A DNA stretch of 64,000 nt. Source: Lepidodermella squamata (lineage: Eukaryota; Animalia; Gastrotricha). The position numbers were made by a program, and so were the translations under genes. Below the pieces are notes generated by a model. The model was not told where the DNA came from. It ran no database searches and worked only from the letters and a program-made list of their open reading frames with translations. Below are positions 3,001-64,000 of the stretch, in pieces. Position 1 is the first letter of the stretch, and every line of letters starts with the position of its first letter. The stretch is from contig JBLDXI010000074.1 in the NCBI GenBank assembly GCA_047495785.1, forward strand, positions 1,426,001 to 1,490,000. Direction: 5' to 3'.

Positions 3001-3148
3001 CGTTGCCTGCGATCCAGTCGGCCAGCAGCAGACGAGCTTCGATGGACAGTTGCTGCTGGGTGTAGACTGCGTATATTGTCTGCTGCACGATGTTGTTCTC
3101 CGACGGCTGCTGCATCAGCCAACATATTTCGCTCTGCTTCAAAGGCAT
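1..3148 (-). CDS. STAT: STAT transcription factor, STAT5-like, 3'-partial (>922 aa). Exons: complement(2702..3148, 1603..2592, 858..1529, <1..657)
   Basis: N-domain LSIEARLLLADWIA; DNA-binding domain SRGDRKHSQLVTEEKF and LSLPIVVTVHNSQ; linker LWDNYFAEPNRLPFEVP and FTFWDWF; SH2 GT|FLLRFSS split across intron 658..857; tail GGYEKLEQK (Tyr codon 385..387). Three phase-0 GT-AG introns (109, 73, 200 nt) keep the frame. Exon 4 is absent from the ORF track and is open to the window edge. Confidence 0.95.
2618..2652. repeat. (AAAGG)n simple repeat in STAT intron 1
   Basis: aaaggaaaggaaagaaaaggaaaggaaaggaaagg, read directly. Confidence 0.8.
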
Positions 3149-44715: not shown

Positions 44716-45044
44716 TCTCAGCTATTATTTGTAAATGAAAGCATTTAGCGTCAAGACTTTCCGCACTGTTGAAAACAAAACAGCAAGCTGCGACTTATCA
44801 AATTTTGATTACAAGGACCGAACGTGATTAGCAGAATGTCATCGATTACTATAGCGATTTGACCGGATATGCGCCAACCCTGAATAAGGCTATCCTTCAA
44901 ATGGACTCAGGTGATTACGGCAAACTGTTATGTGCTATTCTCGAGGGAAATGAGGAAAGTGATATTATTGTTGTTTCCAGCACCACAAGAAACCTGATGT
45001 TGAAGAAACTGAAATCCCACCTGAATAAAACAAGAAGTTTTTGA
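44716..45044 (+). pseudogene. Decayed annexin repeat-IV terminal exon
   Basis: After acceptor tgtag (44715), phase 1 reads VSAIICK*KHLASRLSALL...QILITRTERD*QNVIDYY...TLNKAILQMDSGDYGKLLCAILEGN. This is collinear with the last exon of gene A (VTAIRTPTMYFAQRLNAAM...RIIVSRCEFDL...FGDYETALTSLINGN) and has the same splice position. Stops at 44736..44738 and 44829..44831. Confidence 0.75.
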
Positions 45045-45290: not shown

Positions 45291-48200
45291 ATGCAGTATA
45301 TTACGCCGACGGACCTGTTCGCGACGAAGGTCGCTTATTTCTATCGGGAGGGCGATCAACGTTTCCAGCCGATTCGCATTGTCATGAAGAAGAAAGACTT
45401 CCTCAGCCTAGAATCGCTTGTCAAAGACCTTAATGAACGAATTTCACTTCGAAATGGCGTGCGGTCGATTTTCGAAGCGCCAGAAGGCCGGCATCGTATC
45501 ACTAGCCTCGATGAAATTCTCAACGAAGGCCATTACATTTGCTCGCAGAGTGAATCGAAAGCTCTACCGGTCAATATCGCTGCAATAAAGCCAGAAAAGT
45601 GGCAGGTCTACAATAACCAGGAGCCGAAGCCTACCCGTCGATTGAAAAATGACGATGGAATACGGCGCCATTCATCAGCCTCGAACAGCATGGATGTCGA
45701 TAGACAAATTCGACAGATTGAAGAGGAACTTTATGGCCCGAAGACAACAAGAGGTCATAGCAAATCACGAAATCGAGGATTGAAACGATTGTCCGCGAGA
45801 GAAAGGCAGCGTAATGAAATCGTGAGCCTCAAATTGGCCGATATCACAAAGGGACCTACGCGCAACGTATCCCTACCAACGATTACGAGGCATAAGAGGC
45901 CGTCCTTACTCATGCAAGGTGTCGACGTTGTTCCAGAGCCCAACAATAACCGAGTATCTTGGCCTCGAGAAGTTCCCTACCTCGCGTTAAACCACTCTTT
46001 AGAAAACTTACCTAGCCGAAATTTGAAATTTCAAAGTTACGCCGCTCAAGTAACGGATCCTCAACGCCAGGGCTTTCGACACTGGACGGTAAGAGTTGCG
46101 ACCGGCAACATGCCAGCTGGTTTCAGCACATCGACAGTTTTCATGTCAATCATCGGCCGAAGTGGCTCGACGCCGAAATTGGCCTTAGCCTCCGAGCAGG
46201 GGGTTTTCTACTCTGGCGCGACCGATATTTTCAAAGTGAGAGCACCTAATGTTGGGACTATCATGAAAATCCGGCTCGAAATTTCCTGTTCGGGTCAACA
46301 GCCGGATTGGTATTGCGAGAATGTTATTTTAGAGGACGATTATTCCATGGAGCGGTTTCCTTTTGTTTGCAAAAACTGGTTCAGTCGAACGATGGGCGAT
46401 CGATCGACATGGCGTGACATCCCAGCATTCGGCGACGAAACTTCAGCCAGAGGTCCGGCGGCTAACCACATCTTTTACGAAGTTACTGTCCATACCGGTG
46501 ATGTGTGGAATGCTGCGACCTCTGGCAAGGTCTATATCACGATATTGGGTGAAAAAGGCTCGTCAAAGACTTTGGAGTTGAATAACCCGAAGAACCATGA
46601 AAATGAGCCTTTTCGTAAGAGCCAAATCGACATTTTCCGAATTGAAAGCCCACCTCTAGGTGAGATCAAGCAATTGCGAGTTTCACACGTTCATGGCCAG
46701 GTAGACTGAAATTTTCTCGGCCTTAGTTTAGTAAACGTCTCTTGTCATTCTCAGGCAAGCGGCGCGCAGACTGGATGGTACCTGGATAGCATAGCTGTTC
46801 GTGAGAATGATCTTCACACCCAGTTCCACTTCCCTGCTTGGCGGTGGCTCAGTGAATTTGCTGATGATAGGCGAACTGCTGTTGAATTGAGGGCGGTTGA
46901 TAACTACAACTACACGTGCCTTCAAGATAGAACCATGGTAAAAATAGCTCAAGAGTTCATCTTTTTAAGCCAAAAAATTTCCTTGTTATCAGTGGCCGTT
47001 CGAACGATGGAAATTTCGGCACATAGGAGCCGAATTGATTTTCTATTCGGAGGTCTCAAAAAAGGCTTTACGCATTACATCTGGTGGCTACATTGACGCA
47101 AGGGGCGAGACTCCTGAACGATTAGGTTAGTTGATGCTCTATTTTATAGAGAAGTAACAGGCATTCAATACGTTTTCTTGCGATCAGATCACACGAGTAA
47201 GTTTCAATAATCTGTCTGTTATACTCTCCTCTTCTATCCTTAACTATCCTTTTAGCTGATTAGCCTATATATAGTAGCAAAGCCTATATTTTCGTTATTA
47301 ATGCAGGTATCTTCCAAGTTTATGACATTGAGGAGAACGAGAGCGAAGCTATCATATCGGTGGTTAATAAGAGCGATTCTCCGTCTTTCTTGGCCTTCAA
47401 CGAAAAGAAACAGATAATATCGAGGCCCAGTTTCGCAAAATTCTGCAAGCTTAGGTTGCATACGTTTTCTAATCGAACTATAGCTCTGGAATCATACAAC
47501 ACTCCCAAGTGAGACTCGCTTTATAGTAGCTCGACTGAGTTTACTTGTTACTTTTTCAATATCAAATCAGCAATTACATGTCCGTGGCTACAAATGGACA
47601 AATTTACTCTGAGAACCAAATGAAGTCACACCCTTCTTCGAATCAGCAATTTCACTGTTATGTAAAAGGCTGCTTTCGAGACAAGGGTGTTATCATGCTT
47701 TGGTAAGTTATCAACAAAAATCCGCTTGAATTTCCTAACATAAAAGTGTAGTACGTCTCGGATACAAGCCCTGTGCATAGATCGCGATCCTTCGCAGCTA
47801 ACTGCTCTTGGTGCTAGAAATAGGTAACCTTCGACGCGGCTAAGTTTCATCTTTCTTTAACTGTCATTTTGGCAGAGTATCCCATTTTCGAGTCCACAAA
47901 GTCCGCCCTAAAGTTCGCCTGTTTGAATCAATCATTTTCCCGGGCCACTTTCTTCGAGCGACGAAAAAATCTTGCGACTGCTTGGGAAAGGGCGATCGAA
48001 TGTGTGAATTCAAGCTGACACGGTTTCGAGATGAGAATTTCGTAGTCCTAGAGGCTCTTGGTGCAAAAGGCAATCTTGGGTTCACTGACAAAGGCGGTGT
48101 TACTCTTCACAATGCAGCGAAATCTGCCGCAACGCAAGCCTTATGCCGCTTGTATCCCGAAGCCATCGAGTGTGAGTTTGCTATAAAATTCAAGTATGTA

Positions 48201-51200
48201 AGTTGTTATTAAAATTCGATTACATAGTTGGAAAGCCGAAAGGAAGTGATGAGCTGGCTTCAGAACATTCATTTATAGAAGAGCCGCATGTGACGATGGG
48301 CCCAGTCGTGTATCTTCCACAAACGCTTCCCCAGCGTCTCCCTCCGCCCCCATCAGGAAATTCTCAACTGACCAGCCCAGACTCAACCAGCCATATATAT
48401 CACCCGCCCGGTTCAAGAAATGTGACGGTAGCGAAACCCGGGAAACTTCACGGCCGTAGCTTCATCAGCGATGCGACGACGTCCGAGGTGTCTACTAAGC
48501 GCTCCACAAAGCCGTCAAGGCGCGGCGTCAGCGACAAGTACGATTCGGATGACGAGTCAATAGAGAGCGAGGGCCATTTTTCAAAATCGACCACCAAGCA
48601 GAGCACGATACAGACGAAGAAATCGACTGTCAGCAAATCTGTCGTGCGGCGCAGTGAAGCGTGGAATGAGATGGCAGACTCCGAGGATGACGGCGATGTG
48701 GAGGAGGATGAGTTGCTCAAGTCGCAGGCAACTTCAAAGAAGACGGAAAAACCGACCCCTGCGCCATCTACCGTGTCTACACAGCCGGCAAAGTCTTCCG
48801 TGGTTTCTCAGCCGACCCCTGTTCGAGCTGTGGCGCCACCTCGACCAGCTGCAGCTCCGATCCCGGCAGGAGCAGCTCCCAGACCCGTTGCACCCGGAAC
48901 CCAGGTGGGTCCCAGACCGGTTGCGCCAGTAGCTGTTCAGCCAAGACCAGCAGCCCCGGCACCCGCACCCGCACCCGCACCCACACCCGCCCCAGCTCCA
49001 GCCCCAGCTCCGGCGCCTCAGCCAAGACCGCCTGCTCCATCTGTGCAGCCGGCCCATGCACCCCAGCCAGGTATAATTTGTCACCACTTTCGGTTTTGAT
49101 ACTTGGGGCAATTGAATAATTTGGTGAGCTAATATTTCCGATTCATATCTCAAGCAACGGCTCAAAAACCCAGCGAGCCCAAGCCAGTTGTTCCCGTGGT
49201 GCAACCACCTAAACCCAAGGGTATTTATTCGAAATACTCTAGAAGGAATTTTCTTATATCGTGAACTCTTTCCTCATTAATTAATTAATTCGAACCTATC
49301 AATTTCTGCCTTCTCATTCTCTTGTACGGTTAAATTCCTTACCCAAACACATTATCATTTATTCTTCTGTCTTCTGGCGCCAATACAATTTCAACTTCCA
49401 AGCGTTTTCGCAATCTTAACATAGCTCACCAACCTTCGTACGGTTGGCTTGATTCAGTTATATGATCAAACGAGATGTCGCTTTTAGAGCCAGAACCTAC
49501 CCCGAGGCCTGCTGCGCCAGAACAGACTAAGCCAGCAGCACCAGTGAAAGCACCGCCTTCTCAACGAGAAAATCCGCCTAAATCGCCTCCTCCAGCAGCT
49601 TTACCACCCAGTAACATAAAATCAATCGGTAATTTGATCCAGACCACCTATCCTTTGATACTATCGTCTTATTTCACTCCTCTCTATTTCGATTATGCAA
49701 ACAATAAGTCTCTGATTCAACTTTATTGCTGTGAATTGTTTTTACTTACAGCTCAAGCCCCAGCGCCTAAACCAGGTTGTTGCTTCTTTCTATGCTGTGG
49801 TGGCGAACTGCCCATTTACTATTAAGATGTTAAGCGTTTTAGCGAATTTTATTTACTTCGAATTAACCATCCGCTGATGGATTGCTGCCTTGTGACTTGA
49901 AAATAACCTAGTATTACCTAAAACCTCCGTTACCTCGAAATTAAATGTGGTGAACCTACTTAATTGCGCTCATAGCTCCGGAATCAATCGCAATTGATGT
50001 CGAGCGTGAACTCTGGCCTGCTACAGCTAAAGCCATTGAGCGAAGACCGGAAACCCCGAAAATTAAGCCATTGCCTCCTCGAGAAAAGACTGCCGAGAAA
50101 ACAAAAGAGCGCGCAATACAGGCAGGGGCAAAACCAGTTGAAGAGGCGAAGAAGCCAGAGGTGAACCCACGAATCTCAGCCGAGAAAACGAACGATGAGC
50201 CTTTTAAGTCCGTAAACACTTCGTATCTGAAACCATCAAATCACATCGAGAAGACTAGAGAGCCACAACCTATTCTTGCTAGAGATAAGACGAGAACACT
50301 TGAGCCAAAGCAAGAGCAGAAATCAAATCCTTCGTCAGATGAATCTTTTCAAGTGCAAAAAGCAACCGGTATTTTCTAAAGAGCGTGCGCTGAATCCTTC
50401 GCGTGCAATTCGATAATCTGCAACTGCTTAAAAATCATTTTGCTGTCTTCGATATCTCTGATATATCAGATTCTTTTGAATCAAAAAACACTTTGCTTAC
50501 AATTCAATTTGATGGCTATCTTTTAATTTTTCAATCCCCAATTTTCGGATCTTATCAATGAGTCTGAGGAATTTTATTTGTCTTCTTCCTGTTGAACTAG
50601 TAACCAGTGTCCAGCTCTTAATCGTTCTTACTTGCTCACTTTCAGCCCCAGCTCCGCCAGCGCAGCCAGTTCAAGCACCGAAACCAGGTAAATCTCAGAT
50701 CAAGAAAACAAACGTCGTGTTTTTGCCCACGGAGTGCCAGTTTGTTGATATTGTCTGTCATTGTCTTTTTACCTTTGTCTTGTTTGAGTTGATTATTCAT
50801 ATATTTCTTATAAAATGTTGCAAACTTTCGATTATTTGTGTTACTTTTCCCTCAGCTCCTGCGCCAGTTCCGGCTCCAGTTCCGGCCCCTTCTACGCAGG
50901 CCCCTAAACCGGCTCCAACACCTCAGCCTGCCCCAACACCTGCTCCAGCTGCGAAACCTATGCCGGCCCCAGCGCCCCAGCCTGCCCCTCAACCGAAACC
51001 GCAACCTGCTCCGGTCGCAGCAACTCCGGCACCGGCACCAGCACCGGCCCCAAAACCACTACCGCCTGCCCAGCCGACGCCACCGATCGCGGCACCACCG
51101 CAAGCTCAACCTGCAAAGCCCGCTGAGCAAAAGCAGGCGGAGAAGCCAAAGGAACCCGAAAAGCCGAAAGAACCGGAGAAACCGAAGGAACCTGAAAAAC

Positions 51201-52681
51201 CAAAGGAACCAGAAAAACCGAAAGAACCAGAAAAACCGAAAGAACCAGAAAAACCGAAGGAACCTGCGAAACCGAAGGAGCCTGAGAAGCCAAAGGAACC
51301 CGAAAAACCTAAAGAGCCTGAAAAACCTGAGAAGCCGAAAGATCATCCGCCACCACCGGCGAAGGAACCTACGAAACCTCCTGCCGAAGCGAAGCCAAAA
51401 GATGCAGAACCACCGAAACCACTTGAGCAAAAACCAGTTGAGAAGCCAAAAGAACCCGAGAAACCGAAGGACCCACCGCCTCCTCCTGCAAAGGAACCGA
51501 CCAAGGCCCCGGAACCGAAAAAGGAAGAGCAGCCTAAACAAGATCTCAAACCAGCACCAGCGCCTGCTCAGAAGCCTCCCGAGCCCCCTAAGGAGCAGGA
51601 AAAACCCACAAACGCAACAGTTATCCCCGCCAAAGTCTTCAATCCAAAGTCTGACGCCGAGCTGCTCAATAAAGCAATGAAGGGCGGCGGTACAGATGAA
51701 GAAGCGTTGATCACAGTGCTAACAAAGCGCAGTTACCCCCAAAGGGTCGAGATTGCGAAGAATTACAAAGATATCTACAAAAAGGAACTGGTCGCCGAGC
51801 TAGAAGAGGAGACAGATGGTAACTTTTTCAACGTTCTGTCTAGCTTGCTGCGGAGTCCAGCTGAGTTAGGTGCTTACAACTTGAAAAACTCTCTGGAGAA
51901 TGACGGGGACGACGAGGATGGTCTTGTTGAGTTTATTTGCACGTCAAACCATGAAAATCTCCAGCAAATAAAGGCTAAATACCAAGAAAGTGAGTTTAAG
52001 CATAATTTTGTAACATTCCTGAATTACCGTACTGTAAATATAGTGTTCAGCATCGCTCTGGAGAAAGACCTTGCCAAAACCGGTGGCAACGCAGTAATTC
52101 GCAAACTTATGATCGCAATGCTTGCCCGACCAAAGGCGCCCGAAAAAGTAGACGAAGCAGCGGCGCGGGCTGATGCTGCTAAATTGGATGTCGAATTGAA
52201 AACAAAAGATGGCGAGAAAAGTGTGGCAGCTTTCAGTGACCTGCTGTCAACTCGCTCTAGGTCACAGCTGCGAGCCATCTTCAACTACTACGAAGAGGCA
52301 CAGAAGAAGTCCTTGGAGCAGGCGTTGACCGAAGAGTACAAGGGCGACGCTCTGAAAGCTTTTCTAGCAGTCGGTATGCCGCTTTATTGGAATTATTTAG
52401 TCACGTTTAATTATGGAATCTTTTTTGATCTAGTGACCGCAATTCGAACGCCGACCATGTACTTCGCTCAGCGCTTGAACGCAGCTATGAATGGGTTCGG
52501 GCCGAAAAACCCTGCCCTCATCCGAATAATTGTCTCTCGTTGCGAGTTCGACCTCGGTCTAGTCAAGGCTGACTATGAGAAAATCTACAAGAAGGCCCTG
52601 CAGAAGGACATCGAGGAGGAAACGTTCGGCGACTACGAAACTGCTTTGACATCGCTCATCAACGGCAATCTGAAACAATAA
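45291..52681 (+). CDS. Gene A: RP1-like DCX-PLAT-PLAT-beta-trefoil protein fused via a Pro/Lys/Glu spacer to one annexin core (~1885 aa). Exons 45291..46700, 46755..46937, 46993..47125, 47188..47196, 47307..47508, 47571..47702, 47752..47823, 47876..48171, 48228..49070, 49155..49220, 49488..49628, 49752..49775, 49976..50368, 50646..50687, 50856..51989, 52044..52373, 52434..52681
   Basis: DCX: AYFYREGDQRF...SLVKDLNERISLRNGVRSIF..PEGRHRITSLDEI..GHYICS. PLAT x2: WTVRVATG...DWYCENV...FPFVCKNWF and YEVTVHTGDVWNAAT...GWYLDSIAV...FPAWRWL. Trefoil motif FESIIFPGHFL. Annexin: DAELLNKAMKGGGTDE...RIIVSRCEFDL...GDYETAL. All junctions are GT-AG and in frame (5658 nt). Individual spacer exons are less certain than the domains. 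Confidence 0.82.
47188..47196 (+). other. 9-nt microexon of gene A (ATCACACGA)
   Basis: ttttcttgcgatcag|ATCACACGA|gtaagt. Inclusion makes the alignment to gene B gap-free (ARGETPERL-DHTS-IF versus ARAEPVDKK-EGFA-VF). Confidence 0.75.
51140..51340 (+). repeat. Coding 18-nt tandem repeat, (EKPKEP)x10 plus partial units
   Basis: Peptide units nearly identical while third codon positions vary between units. Confidence 0.95.
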
Positions 52682-52709
52682 TTTACGTTGTTTGGCTATT
52701 GTTTTGATG

Positions 52710-52715
52710 AATAAA
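52710..52715 (+). terminator. Putative polyadenylation signal of gene A
   Basis: AATAAA 29 nt after TAA; supports A and B being separate genes. Confidence 0.6.
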
Positions 52716-53049
52716 CTAATCAATGTGAATACGCTGGCCTTTTCTATTGATTGATCGATTAGACGGGTGCTCATTAGGCATTCATGTCGCCTTGGTACGC
52801 CGCAAAATAGTGGCACTCACGCACGTGTAAGCGAACGCTCTACCAGTATATTGACTAAAGGAGCAGGCATCGAATAATGAAGTTGCCGTTCTGACACCAC
52901 CCCTGTCCATCGCAAGTCATTGCTAGCCGGTATCGTTGTTTCATCAAAATTTCCCCAGGCTTACAGAGTGAACAAAAATTATTCCATTACAGTTCAATAT
53001 AGAGCTTTACATGAAAATGTTGATAGGTATTCCTCGCGAAAATTAACTG

Positions 53050-56000
53050 ATGAAAATGCGAGGACGAGGTGGAAATTACGACGCTTCAGTTATGGATGAT
53101 GACGATGAGGAAGAAGATCAGGACGACGACTATCTGTACAAATACATGCAGAAGCCGCAGCAGAACCAGCAGTTGCGAAAACTGCCTTTTGCGGCTGTAC
53201 AAGCCTCAGAGCAATACGGCGGGAAAGTTGCCCACTTCCATGCTGAGGGAAACACGGGCAACACGCCTGCGCAGAAGGTTATCATTTCGAAACTCCGATA
53301 TCCCACCCTGGATTTGCTGATGGACGATCTGAATCGACGAATTCATTTGTCGCGTGGTGTTCGAGCGATTTACACGCCAAAAGGTCGGCATGCTATCGAA
53401 GATTTGGCTGATATCGAACACGGTGGGCACTACATTGTTTCGTCGTCGGTGTTTCGCGGCGTTGAGACGGATGTTGCGAAGGGAGCATCAGGTCCTAAGC
53501 CGTGGCTGGTCAATCGGCATCACATGGACAGGTACAAGCCAGAGGATGCGACGTATTACAACGCACTAAATAACGGCCAACTTCGCAAGAGATCGCGTAA
53601 TGACTCGGCATCAGAACGCAGGCGCAGTGTAAGATTTTCGCGGCTCCATTATTAATCATTTGACAGCAAAACTCCTATTTCATTCCATAATTTCTTGCAC
53701 GGAATGAGGAAAGCGGGAGAAATTATAAGCTGATGTTATTTTTGCCATCAGACCTCTACTTTTTCATTTAAAGATTCAAATCGTTCAGCTTAATTTGTTC
53801 CCTTCTATTTTTTCAGAGATCCAATGAGCGTGAATTGACTCGGTTGCCTGATATCTCACCGCGAACTAACGGCCCTGTTCGCGGCAAGAAAGAGAACAAA
53901 CTGAGCCGGATAACCCCTTCTCGCCGATATTTCTCAGACGATGACACTGACCGCCGGCCTTACGGCCTACGTCAGTCCTACCCAGATTCGGCTCGAAAGA
54001 AAACTATTCTCCCGAAAATTGGAGGGGCTCCGAAGAAAGCGTGGGAAGAGCCGAAATCACCGCCGCCAGCTCGCGGGTTGAAACGGCTTGAACACGAGCC
54101 TTGGAACGAACCGCCAGCTCGAAAGAACCCCAGGAAAAAAGGGGTGAACCCTGAGGCTTCAGCGTATTGGCCAACTGGGGTCGGCTATCGTGGTGACGAT
54201 TATGTGATGCCTCCAGCTGTTTTCCAACAGCAGCAAAAACAAGAAGCTCTGTCGCAGAACAACGGTCAAAATAATGCTGCTGCTTCACGGCGAGGCAAAA
54301 TGTTGGACTACGGCCGAAATGCCATGTCTCGCCATTTAGTCTACACCATCCGTCTGATGAGTGGTGAAATGCCAAGTGGTGCATCTACCTCTAACGTTAT
54401 GATAACGCTGTACGGCGCCCATGGCTCTTCGCCTACCTTCACATTTGAACCCAAGAGAAAGGCTTTCTTATCCGGGACGACCGAAGTATACGCCGGAGTG
54501 CGTCTGCCCCAGGATATTGGAGACATTTACAAGCTGAGGATAGAAATAACAAATACAGGCTTGAATCCAGATTGGCTGTGTGATGAAATCCAAGTGGAAG
54601 ACGAATCAACGCGCGAAATCCTCAGCTTTCCCTGCAGAAGGTGAGATTAGGGATTAAAATGTCAATATACATATATGAACAATCGCGTTTTTCAAGATGG
54701 CTCTCTTCAACACTCGGTGATCGGCACATTGTTCGAGAAATTCCTGCACTTGGTCAAGACAGGCCACCAGTTGCTCGTAAGTTACCTCATGCTTCCATTG
54801 AGCTATTCCTTCAGACAAGGACCTGTTTCCTCGTTTAGTCGTTCACTACGAATTAACCGTCCAAACCGGTAATCTTTACAACGCTGGCACGGCTGGTAAA
54901 GTTACTATTACATTGTTTGGTGAGCGAGGCGATTCGGGGGCTCGGCTGTTAAAAATTCCAATCTCCAATAACCGATCACCCTTTTCAAAGGGCGCTAGCG
55001 AGGTTTTCATGATAGAGAGCGTATCTCTCGGGGAACTGCGGCGTCTTAGAGTACAGCATGAACCTGAATCTCAGCAAGCTGGCTGGTATTTAGATCACAT
55101 AATTGTCCGAGAAAAGGTAACTTGATAGAATGCTATAGAATATAGCAAACAATGTCATAATAGGATTTGCATGCAACCTTTGTATTTCCCGCCCAACGGT
55201 GGCTGAATACCCGCGATGAGGATCGGCAGCTAGCGGTCGACCTCAAAGCCAGTGATTTTCCGAATTACGCTCGTTTTCTTGACAAAAAGCTAGTAAGTTG
55301 ATTTTTCACGGCATCTTCGAAGGTTCATCACGATGTTTAGTGGCCAACCGAGCGATGGAAGTTCAAATTGGTTGGTGCCGAGCTGGTGCTCTACTCGATG
55401 ATGTCAAATAAGGCTCTCCGCGTCACTGGAGGAGGCTTCATTGACGCAAGAGCTGAGCCTGTTGACAAGAAAGAAGGCTTTGCTGTATTTTTGTCGCAAG
55501 AGCCCAGTGAACACGATAACGAGTCGATTGTAGCACTGAGGACAGCATCGAAACTACCAAGTTTTGTGGCCTTCAGTGGCAGTCAGAAGATTGTCTCAAA
55601 GAACACGTATTCCGGATCTTGCGACCTTCGGATTCACGCGTTATCCTCAGGAGCTATAACAGTCGAATCAGATAAGTATCCGGGAAATTTCATCTCGGTA
55701 GCATCGAATGGCCAGATGTATCCTGAAGCGCAAGCGTTGGCCCAACCAGGACCTAATCAGTCGTTTTTTGCCTACGTGAAAGGAGCTTTTCGAGACACCG
55801 GTATCGTCATGCTGTGCACATCCAAGAATCAAACGATGTGTATCGATCGAGATCCGAGTTCGGTTTCCGGCATTGGAGGCCGAAACAAGTTGGCTCATTT
55901 TCGCGTTCACAAGGTCGCGATTGGCAATATTCGAATGTTTGAATCTGTTGTCTTCCCTGGCAGCTATTTGCAAATAAAAAAGGGAGCATGCAATTGCTTA

Positions 56001-59000
56001 GGAAATGGCGACAAATTCTGTAAGCTCAAAGATAATAAATAGTAAAAGCTGAATGTATTTATTTATTTATTTGATTTAAGGTGAATTCCGAGTCAGAAGA
56101 TTCCGAGAGCAGAACTTCGTGACGCTCGAGAGCATTCGTGATAGGGGCTTTTTGACCTTTGCCCCAAATGGCCAGATTCAAGTTCTCGAGCATCAACCAG
56201 CAACAGGGGCTCCATCTTCCAGGCTATACCCTGAAGTCGTATCATGTGCGTTTGTCCGAGCTCGAAAGTGTTTATCGATTGATCTATTCTTTTACTTCAA
56301 ACAGTTGGTCGGAGAAAAGAAGGCAGCAAGCCACCATCTGAAATCACTGAAATTAAGAAGAAAATCGACGATCCTGATTCCGACCTCAATTCCGAGGTTG
56401 ATGACCTGTATCGGGATCGATATCGCGGGAAACCGAAACCAGCGCGAAAATCCAACGATCCTCCGCCTGTGCGGAAAGTAAAGAAAGAAGAGCGGGCCCC
56501 ATCGCCTGGTCGGAGGGCTCCACCGAAAGGGCTGAGGCCGACCTTGACACCGGCTGCCCCATTCCACGCCAAGGACGATGCTCAGCTCATTCGCAAGATC
56601 ATCTCTCGCAACGAGTTCGATCCAATCCTGAAAATTGTCTGCCGTCGAACAGCCGACCAGCGAACTGCCGTTGCCAAGACCTATAAAGACCTATTCAAGA
56701 AGGAAGTTGTTCAAGATATCGAGACTGTTTCCCAGGGTGAGCTCAGCGAGTTAGTGTCGGATCTTTTCCTGCCATATATTACCTTCGTGGCGGAGGATGT
56801 GCACAAGGCCCTTCAAGGTAACGTGGACGAAATAGCTATGATCGAAATGCTGTGCTCGAATACAGATGAGGAGCTCACTCAAATCAAGCAAGAGTATCAA
56901 AAACGTGAGCTCTTTAAAATCACAATTAGTCTTGAAATAAGTAAACTTCCAATTCTGTTTAAGGATTCGGTCAAGCCCTGGATTCAAGTATCATGCGATC
57001 GATGACAAGCGGCTTTGCTCAACGACTTTTCGTTAGATTGCTGTCAAGACCATCATCCCATGACTCAGTCGTGAAAGCAGCCATGGAAAATGACGCAAAG
57101 ATGTTGAATCAAGAATTCGGAGAACGCGTCGATCGTCCCGAGGACCATTTTCTGTTCACGTTGCTGGCTGGTCGCAGCCACACCGAGCTGCGAACAATAT
57201 GCGATAGCTACGTCCAACTTTACAAGACGGAGGTCGATCAAGAATGTTTGAAGAAAATCCCTGGCGAGAACGGGAAGTACTACGCCACTGCCATCTCTTG
57301 CATAACCAAGACTCAGAGCTATTTTGCACAGCGGTTGAACGAAATTCTTACAACCGGCCCCATAGATGCGCTAGATCGCGTCATCTTATCTCGCTGTGAA
57401 GTTGATACGGAGAATATCAAAGCAGAATACGAGAGGCTGTTCAACGCGTCACTGACAAAGAAAATGGCGGCGAAGATCAAAGGCAGTCATCTGACAGCAA
57501 TGTTGACTTTGCTGAAAGAACCGGTGCCAGATTCGGGCGAACAGTCGCCACCCTCGACAAGGCGAGATCCCAAAAACCCAGTTAAACCCAAATCAAATGA
57601 TCAGAGCAGCGAATTGGCCCCAACTGTTTTTCCAGAGAAGAATTTCATCGCAAAACAGGATTGTGAAGTCATACAAAAAGCTTTGAAGTCGAAAAATCCA
57701 GAAGAAATAGCTGCTATTCTGACCTCGATTCTAACTCGAAGGTCTTGGCAGCAACGGCAGGATATCGGCAGAGTTTACAAAGATGCGAACAAGCATGACT
57801 TGGAAGGAGATATCGAAGCTGCGGTCGAGGGATTTTTCTGTAAGTTGATGGTGCGGCTCCTGAAGACGCCGGCTGAAGCTATGGCTCGCGACCTTAACGC
57901 TGCGATCAAAGCGAGTGATGAAAGCTGCATCATGGAAATAATCTGCACTGCCTCGCACAATGACCTCCAAGCAATCAAAGACAAGTATCAAAAGCGTAAG
58001 TCCCATATTATTTATTCCTAACGCTTCTTTTTATATGATTTATGATTTGTACACTAATATTTCAATTTTCAATTTTCATAAAGTTTTCAGCAAGCCATTA
58101 CACAAAGACATTGAGGAAGAGAGTGGAGCTTTCCGAAAGTTCATGGTCGGTCTTCTTGGCCGCTCCAAGGCACCCAGTGACTCCACTATTAACCAAGACA
58201 TGTTCGATGCTGATGCTAAAATGCTGCATGACGAGATCAAGAACAACGGCACTGACAACCTTATTAAATTTTTCACTTCGAACCGCGGGCCAAGCCAACT
58301 CAGCTCAATCTACTTGACCTACAAACAGGAGTTCAAAGCTGAGGTCGAAGAGGATTTGAAGAAGCACATGAACAGCGACGTCGGAAATGCATTTCGAACG
58401 TGCGTTGAGTCTAGCAAGAACAAAACTGTCTACTTTGCGAAACGACTGAGAGCTTACTTGGATGGCAAGGGCAACCAGAACGCCGGCGTTGGTCGCCTCG
58501 TTGCCTCTAGGTGCGAGGTTGATCTCGCAAATATCAAAGCCGAGTACCACAAATTGACCGGCAAAAGCTTGACCCTGAGCGTCGCCAGCCTCGTCACGCC
58601 GAAGGACTACAGTCAAGCTGTTGTTTCTTTGATTGAGGGTAACAAATCAGGGAGTGGACAACTGGCTGGGCCCGCGCCGCCTCCTTATACGCCTACTGTA
58701 TTTGCTGAGCCGAAATTCAACGTAAAGCAGGACTGTGACGCGCTTCAGAAAGCTGTGAAAGGCGCAGTAACGGAACCTTTCATCACCATTCTTACTAGAC
58801 GGTCTTGGCAACAACGTGCTGAAATTGAAAAGACCTACAAGGATGCTAATAAGCGTGAGTTGGAAAAGGATCTGGAGGGCGAGACAAGCGGGAACTTCTT
58901 GAAGGTTTTGTTGAAACTTCTGAAAAAACCTTACGAAAGTTCGGCTCGGGATTTGAATGTGGCCATTAAGACGAACGACACAGATTGCTTGATCGAGATC

Positions 59001-62000
59001 ATTTGCGCAAGCTCCCACTCCGACCTTCAGTCGATAAAAGAGACCTATAAAGAGCGTAAGCTGAGTTCAAAACTTTCAGCCACCATAACTTATTTCTTTA
59101 CAGTATTCGGCTCAAGTCTTCAAGAAGATGTCGAATCTCTGAGCGACTCGAAGCTTGAAGAGCTGTTAATCGCTTTGATCAATCGCCCAAAATCACCTGA
59201 AACCGTCGATGCATCAAACGCGAAAAACGAAGCTCGGGATATGCATGATGAGATAACAGCCGGTGGGAAAAAGGGCGTTAAGCATGTCAACGAACTGATC
59301 TCCACAAGAGGCCAAGCCCAGCTGAGAGCAGCATTTGATGCCTATCAGAAGGAGTACAGTGTCGACATTGCCGATGACTTCAGGAAGTATTTCGATGGCG
59401 ATATTGAGGGAGCCTACGTTACAGTTGGTAAGTTTTATTCGGCCATGTGTATTATTAATAGAACACTGAAATCCTGCGTTTAAGTCGATGCGATCCGGAG
59501 CAAACCCAGATACTACGCGAAACGATTAAACAGTGCACTTACGGCTAACAGTGGCACTCACCACGGGTCTCTAATTCGGCAAATCGTAGCCCGCTGCGAG
59601 ATTGATTTGGCCAATGTCAAGTATGAATATGAACAGCTATACGGTAAATCTCTTCTGAAGGATGTTGAGTCAAAAACGTCGGGCGATTACCGGAGTGCCC
59701 TGGTTTCTTTAATAAATGGCAACAAAGCTGTCGAAGCTCCTCCTCCCCCGCCTTCTAAGCCCAAACCAGCAGAACCAAAGCGCCCTGAACCGAAGCCTTC
59801 AACTAAGGAGCCCGTTGTCAAAGAGGCGAAAGAATCCAACGTGAAAGCTCCTCCACAGTCGAAAATGAAATTCATCCCCACAGTAGTCGCTGAGCCGAAG
59901 TTCGATGTCAAAAAAGATTGCGAAGTCCTTATGAAGGCAATGAAAGGAATCGGGACCGATGAAGATGCTCTAACATCAATTCTCACCAAGCGATCATCGA
60001 AGCAGCGTCAGGATATTAAGAAGAATTACAAAGAAATTTACGATAGGGTTAGTTTATTTATATATCAACTTAGTATCGAACGATTATTAATGATGCCATG
60101 AAATTGTAAAGGAACTGAAACAGGTAAAATCAGCTCTATCTCTGCCTGTGATTTTCTGAGAGATCTAACATTTCATCTATTTAAGCAGGCTATCGCTTGC
60201 AATATTCTGTATTTATTTTTGAAATATTATGATCTTGTTCTCGCAGGACTTGGCTAAGGAAATCGATTCGGAAAACAACGGCAACTACCTGAAAGTCCTC
60301 ATGGCCCTCTTGTCGACCCCAGCGGGCTACTTGGCTGAATGCCTCAATGCTGCAATGAAAGGAGCTGGAACAGACGAGGACACTCTCATCGACATAATCT
60401 GCACTTCTTCAAACGCAGACCTTCAACTAGTCAAGGAAGCCTATTTGTCCAGTAAGTTTCCTATGACTCTCAGTTTAATGATTATTGAATGGCTGAAATA
60501 TTCTTGGCAGAATTCAAGGCCAAGCTGGAGGATGACATCGTGAGCGATACATCTGGGTCTTTCCAAAATCTGTTGGTTTCCCTGCTAAACCGGCCGAAAT
60601 CGCCGGAGAAAGTTGATCCGAAAACAGCTAAAGGCGATGCCAAAATGCTGCATGATGAAATAATGAAAGGCGGAAGCAAGGCTGAAGTGCAACTCAACAC
60701 CCTGTTCGCAACACGAGGTAAGGCATCAAATTGCATACGTGCTTCCTGATACTCACCCTTTTCATAGGCCAAGCTCAGCTAAGAATGGCGTTTGACTTCT
60801 ACAAAGAAGATTTCAAGTCAGATATCGAGGATGATATCAAGAAACACTTTGATGGCGACATTGAAGCTGCCTACGTCGCTGTCGGTGTGTTTGGTAGCTT
60901 GTTTAGTATATTTATATTAATTGTCCTGACTATCAATTAGTTGGTGCCATCCGTAACAAGCCGCTGTACTTGGCGAGGCAAGTGGACAAATCCATGTCAG
61001 GCGCAGGGACGAGAGACGATGACTTGATCCGCCTGGTCGTTTCCACGTGTGAAATCAACCTCGGCAACATCAAGACCGAGTATGAAAAGCTGAAAAAGCA
61101 ACCCTTGGTTAAGTCTGTTGAAAGCGAAACGAATGGAGACTACCAGAAGGCCTTGGTTTCGTTAATAAATGGAAATTTTGATGCGAAAGCTCCAGCAAAA
61201 GAAGAAAAGCCGAAAGAGGAACCAAAGACGCAAAAGAAAGCCGCTGAACCTGGTAAAACTTTTTCAATCACGATCGTTTCATTTTGTAATGACTCAAATT
61301 TGGGAAATGAATAGCTAAAACAGGAAAAGGTGCTACTACTGCTAAGGCAGGGAAAACAAACGAAAAAGCGGCGGTTTCAAAAAAAGGTGACCCCGAAACC
61401 CGGTGTTAATTTGTGTGTTTTAGAGTAGACGAAAATTAGCTGAAAATTAGCTGCCCATTGTTTTTGGCATGATGAGTTTTTATTATATCTTGAAAGACAA
61501 TTAATCTCGCCTAACCCAATCGCTTCTTTGCTTTCTATTAGAAACCGAGGCGAAAAACATTGCCTCTATTCCAACGGTGGTTGCCGAGCCGAAATTTGAT
61601 GCGAAAAAAGACGCCGAAGTACTGATGAAGGCGATGAAAGGCATCGGCACAGACGAGAAGAGCATCATCGCCGTGCTAACCCGTCGAAACTACGCTCAAC
61701 GGGCCGAAATTGAAAAAGCCTACAAAGCTGAATACAAAAAGGTGAGATGATCAATTTTCGGAATGTGAGATGCTGTTCAAATTCGATTTATTAAGGATCT
61801 TGTTTACGTAAGTTAATGGGTTTTGTAAATCGCCGTCGTATCTGTATCGTATCGTAGCATTATGATGTTTTTTTCATATCTATCATCTATCTGTCGTCTA
61901 TGAAGTCTATTCTATCAATCTGTCTAAATGACCATAATTTTCGAATTTTGATAAATTTCTTCCAGGAATTGAGGTCTGAGTTGGAGAGCGAAAATAGTGG

Positions 62001-64000
62001 TAAGTTCCAGGACACCTTGGATGCGCTCATGACGGCGCCTCTCGAGTTCGCGGCTCAGAGTCTGAAAAAAGCAATTGAGGGAGCTGGAACAGATGAAGAG
62101 GCAATCATTGAGGTGCTATGCTATGCTAATTACGACGACCTTCAACTAATCAAAGCCAAGTACGAAAAGCGTAAGTTGGAGTGGCCGTCGCACATTCATT
62201 TGCATTATTTTTGTTCCTAGTTTACAAGGTTTCACTGCAGAAGGATATCGAGTCGGATACAAGTGGCCATTTTCGAAAACTTCTAGTTGCTCTACTCAAT
62301 CGGCCTAAATCTCCAGAGAATGTTGACGTGAAAGGGGCGAAAACTGATTCGAAAACCCTACATGATGCATTTGCGAAGGGCAGTGATAAAGCTGCCGACG
62401 AGTTGATCAAACTGCTGTCAGGCCGAGGGCGCTCGCAGCTACGGCTCATATTCGACACTTACAAAGCTGATTACAACACTGATGTTGTGGATGACATAAA
62501 GAAAAACTTCGATAGCGACATCGAATCAGCGTTCGTCGCAACTGTCTATTCGATCCGCAACCGTTTCAAGTATTTCGCGAGCCGGTTGAATGCAGCGATG
62601 GCAGGGCTTGGGACTCGAGACCAAGCTCTCATTCGGCTTATTGTCTCGCGCTGCGAAATCGATCTCGGAAATGTGAAGGAAGAGTACGAGAAAATGTACA
62701 AAAAGTCTCTTGTAGCAGCCGTCTCAAGTGAAACTACGGGCGATTACTGCGACTGCTTGGTTTCGCTCATTAACGGTAACGGAAGCGGGAGCCCGCTGCC
62801 AAAAGCTCCTGAACCGAAACCAGTTGAGAAGAAGGCAGAAAAGAAAGAGCCAGAGAAGAAGGAACCAGAGAAGAAAGAACCAGAGAAGCCCGAAAAAGGT
62901 ATTAAAATATAAATGATGCGTATCCATATATAGTCGTATAATGAATCGCTGGGTAATTTTTGAACAGGAAAGAAAGGTAATATCAGCTTTTGCTTTCATC
63001 CAAATTTTTTAAATAGCCGGTTTATTTTATCAAGTAGAGTAGTCTGTAGCCCAATTAAATTCAAATAGCAATGCTCACGCAATTACGATACTATATATTA
63101 TATATTTCTTCAGCAATTGAGGCCTCCTGCGTCGCATCTGTACCGACTGTGGTTGCTGAGCCGAAGTTCGATGCGAAAAAAGATGCTGAGGTGTTGATGA
63201 AGGCCATGAAAGGCATTGGCACGGACGAGAAAAGCATCATCTCGGTTCTCACTCGCCGAACCTATCCGCAAAGAGCTGAGATCGAGAAGAAGTTCAAGGC
63301 GGAATACAAAAAGGTAACTTTAACATTTTTCACTCGCCATGATTACGATATTTAATGGCCTGGCAACATTTTACGAACTTAGAATTTCCTTGAAGTGAGT
63401 CTTGGTGTTGTGTATTTTGACCCCGATTCCTGATTCCCATTGCTCGTGTCATTGCTGTGAGAATCTATTTTAAAATGACGATTCGTTTCAGGAACTTCTT
63501 GCAGATCTAAAGAGTGAAACTGGAGGCGATTTCTTCAATCTTCTCACAGCCCTACTTACTCCACCTATCGAGTTCGCAGCGAAAAGTTTAAAGAAAGCGA
63601 TTCAAGGCGCTGGAACCGATGAGGAAACTCTAATCGAGGTGATCTGCTACGCATCATACGACGATCTTCAACTCATCAAGAGTAAATACGAGATGCGTGA
63701 GTTGAAGTTCTACTATATATTACCCCTTCATAATTCCCCCACTATTCGCAGTTTATCGAGTTCCGTTGCAACAAGATGCCGAAAGTGATACTAGTGGTCA
63801 TTTCCGGAAGTTGCTCGTAGCCTTGCTGAATCGGCCTAAATCGCCTGAGAATATTGATGTCAAAGCCGCGAGATCTGATGCGAAAAGCCTTCATGCCAGT
63901 ATAGCTAAAGGTGGCTCAGCAGCTGCCGATGACCTGACAACGGCTCTGTCGATAAAAGGCCGATCTCAGCTGAGGTTGATCTTCGAGAATTACAAGGCTG
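53050..64000 (+). CDS. Gene B: RP1-like DCX-PLAT-PLAT-beta-trefoil protein fused to at least 6 tandem annexin cores, 3'-partial. Exons 53050..53628, 53817..54640, 54697..54776, 54839..55116, 55164..55292, 55341..56019, 56081..56245, 56305..56904, 56964..57995, 58084..59055, 59104..59427, 59485..60047, 60247..60451, 60511..60717, 60768..60884, 60941..61252, 61315..61386, 61542..61741, 61966..62170, 62221..62898, 63114..63313, 63492..63696, 63752..>64000
   Basis: DCX: YPTLDLLMDDLNRRIHLSRGVRAIYTPKGRHAIEDLADIEHGGHYIVS. PLAT x2: YTIRLMSG...DWLCDEI...FPCRRWL and YELTVQTGNLYNAGT...GWYLDHIIV...FPAQRWL. Trefoil motifs VESDKYPGNFI, FESVVFPGSYL, LESIRDRGFL. Annexin cores start near 56540, 57620, 58690, 59875, 61570 and 63140, each opening with a PTL/PTV..F..K.D motif. 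Introns are mostly 47-90 nt GT-AG and preserve frame. Confidence 0.88.
60112..60123 (+). other. Candidate 12-nt microexon (ELKQ), annexin core 4
   Basis: ttgtaaag|GAACTGAAACAG|gtaaaa inside the 199-nt phase-0 intron 60048..60246. Confidence 0.6.
61796..61807 (+). other. Candidate 12-nt microexon (DLVY), annexin core 5
   Basis: tttattaag|GATCTTGTTTAC|gtaagt inside the homologous intron 61742..61965. Confidence 0.65.
62968..62976 (+). other. Candidate 9-nt microexon (adds GKK) in the linker between cores 5 and 6
   Basis: tttttgaacag|GAAAGAAAG|gtaata inside phase-1 intron 62899..63113. Confidence 0.5.
63383..63394 (+). other. Candidate 12-nt microexon (NFLE), annexin core 6
   Basis: ttttacgaacttag|AATTTCCTTGAA|gtgagt inside the homologous intron 63314..63491. 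Confidence 0.65.

What the first reader, a model, noticed from the sequence alone, without database searches (positions are those of the whole stretch)
45291..64000. Tandem family of DCX-PLAT-PLAT-beta-trefoil-annexin fusion proteins: a candidate Ca2+-dependent microtubule-to-membrane linker system
Seen: two adjacent paralogs share the order DCX, low-complexity linker, PLAT, PLAT, trefoils, spacer, annexin. The join is clearest in gene B: the last trefoil exon (..LYPEVVS, ends 56245) splices over a 59-nt intron into exon 56305..56904, which runs without stops from FGRRKEGSK into annexin repeat I. Gene A uses the same junction (..YPEAIE|FGKPK). Established: DCX binds microtubules and this one resembles the RP1 (axonemal) subfamily; PLAT/LH2 domains target membranes or proteins (LOXHD1, polycystin-1); annexin cores bind acidic phospholipids in a Ca2+-dependent way. 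From memory, long RP1-type proteins carry DCX + PLAT + an FGF-like trefoil, so that half may be known, but I know of no such protein ending in annexin cores. Inference: a lineage-specific tether coupling axonemal or cortical microtubules to membrane, for example in cilia, sensory cells or sperm.
Basis: partly seen in the sequence, partly recalled or inferred. Interest (0 to 1): 0.93.

Follow-up and report, generated by a model that had tools for sequence, protein, structure and literature searches.

The report
DCX-PLAT-trefoil proteins ending in annexin chains
Two neighbouring animal genes join a microtubule-binding-type head (DCX, two PLAT, two beta-trefoils), known from many animals, to a tail of one or at least six annexin membrane-binding cores; a related organism has the same join, no database protein I could search does, and its function is untested.

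Summary
Pfam finds DCX, PLAT x2 and annexin in the stated order in both + strand genes. The trefoil is weak in Pfam, but homology and fold back it.

Gene B's exon ends at 56245, a 59-nt GT..AG intron follows, and exon 56305-56904 runs without a stop or a Met into annexin repeat I. Gene A has the same phase-1 junction at 48171|48228.

A metagenome contig from a related organism (L003, 40-60% aa identity) is colinear with gene B from trefoil 1 to annexin core 4. It has the same "...PEAIE|F-G..." junction and also lacks a Met in its linker. The fusion is therefore conserved and not an assembly or annotation accident.

A small RNA run shows three GT..AG joints in the annexin exons and covers both the trefoil exons and the start of the linker exon. 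It shows no spliced read across 56245/56305.

The head is a widespread annotated family (DCX-PLAT-PLAT-FGF-like trefoil, then a PLAT array) named "LOXHD1-like" or "oxygen-regulated protein 1". Here annexin cores replace the PLAT array. None of 157 relatives inspected carries annexin.

Gene B holds 23 annexin repeats before the window ends. Cores 1-3 lack the Ca2+ loops and cores 4-6 keep them.

The microtubule-to-membrane tether role is plausible but inferred. Other first-stage notes of this scan cover parts of this same stretch, and one reports a paralogue elsewhere in this genome.

The parts
45291..52681 (+). Gene A, whole coding span from ATG 45291 to TAA 52679-52681; about 1700 aa, depending on the spacer exons
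   Evidence: Pfam. Curated N-terminal exons are 45291-46700, 46755-46937, 46993-47125, 47283-47508, 47571-47702, 47752-47823 and 47876-48171; they are stop-free and end in phase 1. Dynamic-programming models.
45381..45554 (+). Gene A DCX domain (single)
   Evidence: PF03607, 49.3 bits, cut-off 22
46086..46937 (+). Gene A PLAT1 and PLAT2; PLAT2 is split by intron 46701-46754
   Evidence: PF01477 3e-21 with 2 stretches, plus 6e-4 for the next exon. 51% identical to metagenome proteins P0006 and P0156.
46993..48171 (+). Gene A double beta-trefoil, 5 exons
   Evidence: Colinear with gene B's trefoils. 47880-48071 matches residues 933-997 of the Branchiostoma protein at 45% identity, E 3e-11.
48172..48227 (+). 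Gene A junction intron (56 nt, GTGAGT..CATAG, phase 1)
48228..51616 (+). Gene A low-complexity spacer: S/T/K-rich, then P/A-rich, then a PEKPKE repeat. The first exon (48228 to about 49079) and the last stretch (50856-51616) are secure; the exons between them are uncertain.
   Evidence: 307-codon ORF 48176-49096 and 722-codon ORF 50513-52678. 18-nt tandem repeat at 51149-51327. Models.
51617..52678 (+). Gene A annexin core (4 repeats; the KGGGT loop in repeat I is intact); in-frame introns 51990-52043 and 52374-52433
   Evidence: PF00191 1e-58, 4 stretches. Repeat list.
53050..64000 (+). Gene B from ATG 53050, still open at the window end (at least 2958 aa, 23 exons in the curated model)
   Evidence: RNA joints 59427|59485, 60717|60768 and 60884|60941 match the model.
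53281..53448 (+). Gene B DCX domain (single)
   Evidence: PF03607, 57.6 bits. Matches the N-terminal DC domain of doublecortin in the PDB, E 7e-5.
54336..55202 (+). Gene B PLAT1 (54336-54727) and PLAT2 (54841-55202), with small introns
   Evidence: PF01477 7e-12 and 6e-11
55341..56245 (+). Gene B double beta-trefoil (exons 55341-56019 and 56081-56245)
   Evidence: Pfam FGF 1e-3. phmmer 1e-21 to 1e-36 to the trefoil module of annotated DCX-PLAT-FGF proteins. Foldseek top hits are all fascin or FGF (model pLDDT 62.6).
56246..56304 (+). Gene B junction intron (59 nt, GTGCGT..AACAG, phase 1)
56305..56540 (+). Gene B linker (79 aa, basic-acidic-basic, no Met), continuous with annexin repeat I in exon 56305-56904
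   Evidence: The counterpart in L003 has similar length and charge pattern.
56541..59717 (+). Gene B annexin cores 1-3 (56541-57514, 57623-58637, 58695-59717); KGxGT loops lost
   Evidence: Pfam. Repeat list. Each core is orthologous to a core of L003.
59880..64000 (+). Gene B annexin cores 4, 5 and part of 6 (59880-61170, 61574-62777, 63146-64000); KGxGT loops intact in repeats I, II and IV where those repeats lie inside the window
   Evidence: Pfam. Repeat list. E 1e-80 to annexin VI structures.

Best explanation
Two tandem paralogous genes of an unidentified animal each encode one cytosolic protein. The head is a single DCX domain, a disordered stretch, two PLAT domains and a double fascin/FGF-type beta-trefoil. 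This head is homologous to the head of a widespread animal family annotated as LOXHD1-like or oxygen-regulated protein 1. A conserved phase-1 splice joins it to a spacer and then to annexin. Gene A has one core behind a spacer of roughly 650 aa that is rich in P, A, E and K. Gene B has at least six cores behind a 79-aa linker.

In the family at large, the position after the trefoils is filled by an array of PLAT domains. In this lineage an annexin array took that place and then multiplied by internal duplication.

Shown here: the domains, their order, the junction, its conservation in a second organism, and transcription with splicing of the annexin exons.

Inferred: the DCX head holds the protein on microtubules, and the annexin cores that keep the K-G-x-G-T loops (gene A repeat I; gene B cores 4-6) bind acidic phospholipid when Ca2+ rises. 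The protein would then tether membrane to cytoskeleton. The loop-less cores 1-3 of gene B would serve as a rigid spacer or a Ca2+-independent binding surface.
For: Domains are confirmed. The junction has identical phase and residues in gene A, gene B and L003.

Neither gene B's linker nor L003's holds a Met, so the first annexin core cannot be translated on its own. In L003 the last trefoil exon, an in-frame 69-nt intron and the linker form one 184-codon ORF (745-1296).

L003 is colinear with gene B aa 631-2061. In a tree, cores 1, 2 and 3 of gene B pair with cores 1, 2 and 3 of L003 (support 100, 100 and 85). All fusion cores are separated from the sampled ordinary annexins by a branch with 100/97 support.

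RNA-run contigs at 99% identity cover 55300-56499 and show three GT..AG joints in the annexin exons. One record links 56166 to 56317. An independent DNA contig spans 55300-59362 without a difference.

The head is homologous to annotated DCX-PLAT-FGF-PLATn proteins. This makes the swap of one lipid-binding repeat array for another a natural reading.

The DCX domain matches the microtubule-lattice-binding N-terminal DC domain of doublecortin. Distal cores match annexin VI at 1e-80 and keep the endonexin loops. Established knowledge on annexin cores and on AnxA11 as a tether is in PMC10882027; the endonexin motif is described in PMC3795353.
Against: No read was shown spliced across 56245/56305. 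The record linking 56166 to 56317 may carry the intron, and the run may contain some DNA. If the 59-nt intron is retained, gene B is truncated at 56479.

For gene A, the middle of the spacer (49.1-50.85 kb) is only modelled. An in-frame ATG at 50558 could start a separate annexin with a P/A-rich N-terminus.

There is only one DCX domain where relatives have two, and its PDB match is modest (E about 1e-4). Half of gene B's cores lack Ca2+ loops. PLAT and trefoil partners are unknown. Microtubule binding, lipid binding, cell type and organism were not determined.
Confidence: 0.55

Rival explanations
1. These are separate genes. A DCX-PLAT-trefoil gene ends at or soon after the trefoils, and the annexin exons belong to one or more independent downstream genes with their own promoter or trans-splice acceptor. 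The apparent fusion would come from joining open frames in silico.
For: No spliced read across 56245/56305 was shown. Gene A has 1.7 kb of poorly defined spacer and an in-frame ATG at 50558. Annexins with long proline-rich N-termini exist (PMC10882027). A dynamic-programming splicer can nearly always find some open path.
Against: In gene B there is no Met between 56305 and repeat II of core 1, and there is none in L003's linker. The only sequence upstream is the trefoil exon. The junction is conserved in phase and residues in three genes. In L003 a single ORF spans the trefoil end and the linker. Colinearity is conserved at 40-60% identity. RNA contigs run from the trefoil exon into the linker exon. 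Core-to-core linkers lie inside single ORFs with no stop after repeat IV.
Confidence: 0.07
2. The fusion is real but the protein is not a Ca2+-switched microtubule-membrane tether. It could instead be a constitutive scaffold at an actin- or membrane-based sensory structure, by analogy with LOXHD1 in stereocilia and with the fascin-type trefoils. The annexin array would act as a rigid rod or a protein-binding surface.
For: The family's usual tail is a LOXHD1-like PLAT array. The trefoil model matches fascin first. Only one DCX domain is present. Cores 1-3 have lost the Ca2+ loops in both organisms.
Against: Distal cores and gene A's repeat I keep canonical K-G-x-G-T loops with the acidic cap. 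The DCX domain is retained in both paralogues and in the metagenome relatives.
Confidence: 0.3
3. Gene B is a decaying or non-functional array, a pseudogene or a runaway duplication, and not a working protein.
For: Ca2+ loops are lost in the proximal cores. Introns of 178-224 nt sit at one position in cores 4-6, where 47-62 nt is usual.
Against: The spliced frame stays open for 2958 codons. Cores 1-3 are orthologous and intact in a second organism. The annexin exons are transcribed and spliced.
Confidence: 0.03

Closest known systems
DCX-PLAT-PLAT-FGF-like trefoil-PLAT(n) proteins, annotated 'lipoxygenase homology domain-containing protein 1-like' or 'oxygen-regulated protein 1'. Examples: Branchiostoma XP_066274370.1, Bombina XP_053571859.1, Bufo XP_040289065.1, Saccoglossus XP_006814608.1, Physella XP_059163011.1, Ciona H2XXL5.
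   Same: Same head in the same order. The sequences are homologous: 26-30% identity over DCX-PLAT-PLAT and 38-45% in the trefoil.
   Different: Those proteins continue with 4 to 18 more PLAT domains and have no annexin. Most have two DCX domains; the genes here have one.
Annexin A6
   Same: More than one four-repeat core in a single chain, joined by a linker. It is the best PDB match of the distal cores, E 1e-80.
   Different: A6 has two cores and a short N-terminus. A recent review of the family (PMC10882027) gives the annexin core as four repeats, eight in annexin A6. Gene B has at least six cores (23 repeats in the window) and a 900-aa folded head.
Annexin A11 and A7
   Same: A long low-complexity N-terminal region in front of one Ca2+-dependent core. 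AnxA11 tethers RNA granules to lysosomes that ride on microtubules (PMC10882027). This resembles gene A's layout and the proposed tether logic.
   Different: They have no DCX, PLAT or trefoil domains, and their link to microtubules is indirect.
LOXHD1 and RP1 (vertebrate)
   Same: LOXHD1 is a PLAT-repeat protein of a sensory organelle, and RP1 is a DCX protein of the photoreceptor axoneme (established knowledge, not tested here). Relatives of the head are named after both.
   Different: Neither carries annexin. I did not test whether the DCX domain here is closer to RP1 than to DCX or DCLK.
Fascin / FGF beta-trefoils
   Same: Fold-level match of the trefoil exon. The Pfam FGF model passes its cut-off in homologues.
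   Different: There are two trefoils, where fascin has four. No actin-binding or receptor-binding residues were examined, and the model has low confidence.

Membership tests
Annexin (PF00191) | Four homologous repeats of about 70 aa per core that match the family profile | tested here: met
   Gene A: 4 repeats, 1e-58. Gene B: 23 repeats in 5 full cores plus 3 repeats of a sixth. PDB annexin VI at 1e-80.
Annexin (PF00191) | Endonexin K-G-x-G-T loop with an acidic cap (type II Ca2+ site) | tested here: inconclusive
   Present in gene A repeat I and in gene B cores 4-6 (repeats I, II and IV where those repeats lie inside the window). Absent from gene B cores 1-3 and from cores 1-2 of L003.
Annexin (PF00191) | Ca2+-dependent binding to acidic phospholipid | not testable with these tools
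   Needs liposome co-sedimentation.
Doublecortin (PF03607) | DCX domain that matches the profile | tested here: met
   49.3 and 57.6 bits against a cut-off of 22. Matches the N-terminal DC domain of doublecortin in the PDB, E 7e-5.
Doublecortin (PF03607) | Tandem pair of DCX domains, as in DCX, DCLK, RP1 and most relatives of this head | tested here: not met
   One Pfam stretch in each gene and in the nearest relative P0006. Two stretches in P0001, P0024, P0036, P0080, P0089, P0102 and P0145.
Doublecortin (PF03607) | Microtubule binding | not testable with these tools
   Needs co-sedimentation or localisation.
PLAT/LH2 (PF01477) | PLAT domain that matches the profile | tested here: met
   Two per gene: 76.8 bits for gene A; 46.6 and 43.6 bits for gene B.
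Beta-trefoil, FGF/fascin type | Profile match above the curated cut-off | tested here: inconclusive
   Gene B itself scores 19.5 bits against a cut-off of 24. Homologues of the same module pass, for example P0024 at 54.9 bits.
Beta-trefoil, FGF/fascin type | Trefoil fold | tested here: inconclusive
   The top 50 Foldseek hits are all fascin, FGF or a designed trefoil, with TM by target about 0.5 for the FGFs. The model is weak (pLDDT 62.6) and the exon lacks the last 55 aa of trefoil 2.
DCX-PLAT-PLAT-trefoil-PLATn family ('LOXHD1-like' / 'oxygen-regulated protein 1' as annotated) | Homologous head with the same domain order | tested here: met
DCX-PLAT-PLAT-trefoil-PLATn family ('LOXHD1-like' / 'oxygen-regulated protein 1' as annotated) | PLAT array after the trefoils | tested here: not met
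   After the trefoils come a linker and annexin cores. There is no PLAT hit downstream of 55202 in gene B or of 46937 in gene A.

The most novel reading that the evidence does not exclude
This is a previously undescribed class of giant cytoskeleton-to-membrane tethers. In it, a chain of six or more annexin cores replaced the PLAT array of an old animal DCX-PLAT-trefoil protein. Ca2+-insensitive cores sit next to the microtubule-binding head and Ca2+-sensitive cores sit at the far end. The paralogue pair would give two reach-and-valency settings: a long entropic spacer with one core (gene A), and a short linker with a stiff multivalent rod (gene B). Both would couple membrane to axonemal or cortical microtubules when Ca2+ rises.
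Probability: 0.3. Interest if true: 0.8.

Novelty: new variant of a known kind. Interest (0 to 1): 0.62.

Why it matters
A recent review of the annexin family (PMC10882027) describes the core as four repeats, eight in annexin A6, behind N-termini that are unique to each member. A protein with a 900-aa folded head of DCX, PLAT and trefoil domains and at least 23 annexin repeats would extend what the family is known to build.

It also gives a natural experiment. In one old animal protein family, evolution exchanged a PLAT array for an annexin array. This suggests that the tail's job is peripheral membrane binding, and so gives a lead on the unstudied DCX-PLAT-trefoil family itself.

The graded loss of Ca2+ loops along the chain, conserved in two organisms, and the contrast between the two paralogues (spring plus one core, against rod of many cores) can be tested directly with recombinant fragments. 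Without function or organism, the finding remains a well-supported architectural novelty.

Tried and rejected
1. Search for an annotated full-length orthologue. An exhaustive phmmer of gene A's DCX-PLAT exon against 1.84 billion representatives gave nothing closer than 52% identity (metagenome fragments). None of the 157 proteins kept had annexin.

2. Annexin-side word search. It found only ordinary annexins, but it saw only proteins of 397-1263 aa and scored only 8000 candidates, so it is a weak negative.

3. JGI metagenome scans with the DCX-PLAT alignment and with the trefoil. These gave nothing useful: one contig at 27% identity, 1282 nt.

4. Organism identification. The STAT ORF search was blank. 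The Atlas only confirmed STAT. An exact look-up of the first exon product is not on record. The taxon stays unknown. It is an animal, because the window holds a STAT gene and, by eye, Ig/FN3-like and GPCR-like genes.

5. My automatic splicer finds open paths but misplaces small exons, and such a path would exist in almost any sequence. I therefore do not count its mere existence as evidence. I curated gene B by paralogue and orthologue homology and by the RNA joints.

6. RNA proof of the key junction. It gave coverage on both sides and one record linking 56166 to 56317, but no clean skip joint.

7. Trans-spliced downstream annexin gene. I rejected this for gene B because there is no start codon.

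8. The stretch 44832-45041 as an upstream annexin remnant. There is no Pfam hit and only a weak pairwise match, so I left it as a note.

9. Literature searches for DCX+PLAT+annexin, 'doublecortin domain' + 'PLAT domain', LOXHD1 + doublecortin, and multi-core annexins. None of the listed papers concerns such a protein.

Full report
WHAT IS THERE

The window comes from an animal genome. It holds a STAT gene and, by eye, Ig/FN3-like and GPCR-like genes. Introns in this locus are mostly 47-62 nt.

From 45291 to the window end, the + strand carries two genes in tandem.

- Gene A has DCX (5e-13) and PLAT (3e-21, two stretches, with the rest of PLAT2 in the next exon). It ends in an annexin core of four repeats (1e-58), followed directly by TAA at 52679.
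- Gene B starts at the ATG at 53050. It has DCX (1e-15), two PLAT domains (7e-12 and 6e-11) and a weak FGF-like trefoil (1e-3, below the cut-off). Annexin is found in every open frame from 56.5 kb to 64.0 kb.

THE JUNCTION

- Gene B: the last trefoil exon ends at 56245 with ..PEVVS plus one base. The intron is 56246-56304 (59 nt, GTGCGT..AACAG). The next exon begins at 56305 and reads F-GRRKEGSK. It stays open for 600 nt, through a 79-aa linker and into annexin repeats I and II.
- Gene A: the exon ends at 48171 with ..PEAIE plus one base. The intron is 48172-48227 (56 nt, GTGAGT..CATAG). The next exon begins at 48228 and reads F-GKPKG.

The phase, the split Phe codon and the following Gly are the same in both genes.

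Gene B's linker contains no Met. The first Met after the junction lies in repeat II of core 1. Core 1 therefore cannot be the start of an independent protein.

INDEPENDENT SUPPORT FROM ANOTHER ORGANISM

A word search with gene B's trefoil exon found one protein, P0171, at 62% identity. It lies on a 4747-nt ENA metagenome scaffold, L003.

L003 is colinear with gene B from trefoil 1 to the first repeat of annexin core 4. Gene B aa 631-2061 align in order, at 60% identity in the trefoils and about 40% in the annexin cores.

L003 has the same junction..PEAIE plus one base | GTAAGT ... TTCAAG | F-GEKKG. Its intron is 69 nt and stop-free in frame, so the trefoil end and the linker form one 184-codon ORF (745-1296) even without splicing. 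Its linker has a similar length and a similar basic-acidic-basic pattern, and it also lacks Met.

In a maximum-likelihood tree, gene B cores 1, 2 and 3 pair with L003 cores 1, 2 and 3 (support 100, 100 and 85). All cores of the fusion proteins, gene A's included, sit on one side of a 100/97 branch that separates them from the sampled ordinary annexins. This fits one acquisition of annexin followed by internal duplication, with at least three cores in place before the two organisms split. The outgroup sample is small.

RNA AND ASSEMBLY EVIDENCE

Only one RNA-type run holds this locus. It is small and is kept as very short contigs. Its contigs are 99% identical to the window.

The run shows three GT..AG joints: 59427|59485, 60717|60768 and 60884|60941. 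These are exactly the introns of my model, so the annexin exons are transcribed and spliced.

Its contigs also cover the trefoil exons (55300-56299) and the start of the linker exon (56300-56499). One record joins 56166 to 56317 in opposite orientation. From the one record shown in full (record 7), these 'opposite strands' joints look like two mates of one fragment written head to head. That would put the trefoil exon and the linker exon on one molecule. I could not tell whether the 59-nt intron was removed in that molecule, and no clean skip joint across 56245/56305 was listed.

A DNA run's own contig covers 55300-59362 without a difference, so the adjacency is not a scaffolding artefact. The DNA run may be the same sample as the window.

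GENE MODELS

My dynamic-programming splicer finds open paths. Such paths are easy to find in any sequence, and it misplaces small exons, so I do not count path existence as evidence.

I curated gene B by homology to gene A, to L003 and among its own cores, and by the RNA joints. The model has 23 exons and 2958 codons with no stop, and it is still open at 64000. A repeat HMM built from its own clear repeats finds 23 annexin repeats: five full cores plus three repeats of a sixth. The core-to-core linkers lie inside single ORFs, with no stop after any repeat IV.

For gene A the head is secure. Seven exons, 45291-48171, are stop-free and end in phase 1. The first spacer exon is a 290-aa ORF from 48228 that ends P/A-rich. 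The last roughly 250 aa of spacer (P/A-rich, then a PEKPKE repeat seen by TRF at 51149-51327) lie in the same ORF as the annexin core.

The exons between 49.1 and 50.85 kb are only modelled. An in-frame ATG at 50558 leaves room for a separate annexin gene. I put gene A's fusion at about 0.8 and gene B's at about 0.9 or higher.

WHAT THE HEAD IS

An exhaustive phmmer of gene A's first exon against 1.84 billion representatives shows that the head belongs to a widespread, computationally annotated animal family: DCX (usually two), PLAT, PLAT, an FGF-like double trefoil, then 4 to 18 more PLAT domains.

Members are named 'lipoxygenase homology domain-containing protein 1-like' in Branchiostoma, Saccoglossus, Physella, lamprey and sharks. 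They are named 'oxygen-regulated protein 1' in Bombina, Bufo and Protopterus. Ciona, Lottia, Sanderia, Trichuris and Anneissia also have relatives.

Gene B's trefoil exon matches the corresponding module of these proteins at 1e-21 to 1e-36 and at 38% identity to Branchiostoma. In those proteins the Pfam FGF model passes its cut-off.

An AlphaFold model of the exon is weak, with pLDDT 62.6; the exon lacks the last third of trefoil 2. Even so, all 50 Foldseek hits listed are trefoils: fascin, FGF1/2 and a designed trefoil.

That half is known, at least to annotation pipelines. I found no paper on it.

WHAT IS NEW

None of the 157 DCX/PLAT proteins retrieved has any annexin similarity. An annexin-side search returned only ordinary annexins (limited in length range and candidates). 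All 100 nearest named Atlas clusters are annexin-only (only clusters of 50 or more members are searched). The literature searches listed no paper about such an architecture.

The novelty is the replacement of the family's PLAT array by an annexin array, and the length of that array. The review I read gives the annexin core as four repeats, eight in annexin A6 (PMC10882027).

HOW IT PROBABLY WORKS (INFERENCE)

Neither protein shows an obvious signal peptide by eye, so a cytosolic location is likely.

The retained DCX domain aligns with the first DCX of the relatives. It also aligns with the N-terminal DC domain of doublecortin, the one seen on the microtubule lattice in PDB entries 4atu, 2xrp and 6rev (E about 1e-4).

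The K-G-x-G-T loop marks the type II Ca2+ site (PMC3795353). The distal cores of gene B and repeat I of gene A keep this loop with its acidic cap. Cores 1-3 of gene B, and cores 1-2 of L003, have lost it.

PLAT arrays and annexin arrays are both peripheral membrane-binding repeat modules (established knowledge). The swap therefore suggests that the tail's job is to hold membrane.

The simplest mechanism is a microtubule-anchored protein whose far end grips acidic phospholipid when Ca2+ rises. Gene A would reach through a disordered spacer of about 650 aa with one core. Gene B would reach through a short linker, three Ca2+-insensitive cores acting as a spacer, and three or more Ca2+-sensitive cores.

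The caveats are a single DCX domain, unknown partners of the PLAT and trefoil domains, and no expression or localisation data. A constitutive scaffold role, or a link to actin through the fascin-like trefoils, cannot be excluded.

VERDICT

The function is inferred.

The scan's other first-stage notes on this same stretch agree with what I see. These concern the giant poly-annexin, the polarised loss of Ca2+ loops, the 12-nt exons and gene A's spacer. One further note reports a paralogue elsewhere in the genome, which I could not read.

Noticed in passing
window 61796-61807 and 63383-63394 (+): Candidate 12-nt exons (encoding DLVY and NFLE) lie at the same place in the unusually long introns (224 and 178 nt) of annexin cores 5 and 6. 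Each is flanked by AG and by GTAAGT or GTGAGT. Gene A and gene B cores 1-3 have no intron at that position and lack these four residues. The direct join also matches, from memory, the annexin A5 spacing. If the exons are real, they are probably optional. No RNA covers them.
   Followed up: partly
window 44832-45041 (+): A 70-codon ORF ending in a stop, between the GPCR-like gene and gene A, resembles the second half of an annexin repeat (..SGDYGKLL..LEG). BLASTP against annexin A6 gives E 3e-5 in a single comparison, but there is no Pfam hit. It may be a relic or chance.
   Followed up: partly
window 804-3148 (-): STAT-like gene in three large ORFs. The Atlas feature search hits STAT_bind and STAT_alpha clusters. 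A word search with the 304-aa ORF found no relative at E 1e-5, so it is a very divergent STAT.
   Followed up: partly
window 27198-32020 (+) and 43054-44471 (+): By eye, there is an Ig/FN3-type receptor with a transmembrane segment, and a GPCR-like gene with an NPxxY-type motif. Neither was checked with a profile search.
   Followed up: no
window 3200-27000: About 24 kb without any long open frame on either strand. This contrasts with the tight packing of genes A and B, where the stop of A and the ATG of B are 368 nt apart.
   Followed up: no
window 51149-51327 (+): An 18-nt tandem repeat, 9.9 copies, encodes (PEKPKE)n in gene A's spacer. A second short repeat at 62826-62888 encodes (EKKEP)n in the linker after core 5 of gene B.
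   Followed up: partly
window 55300-61299, RNA run X1: Nine 'opposite strands' joints lie 81-165 nt apart. Record 7 suggests they are two mates of one fragment written head to head in the stored contigs, and not rearrangements. The three that straddle introns are the longest (151-165 nt).
   Followed up: partly
L001, L002, L004 (ENA metagenome contigs): The same metagenome projects that gave L003 also hold contigs with a gene A-type DCX-PLAT-PLAT exon (51% identity) and a second copy of the trefoil exon. The related organism therefore seems to have both paralogue types, but the contigs are too short to show gene A's tail.
   Followed up: partly
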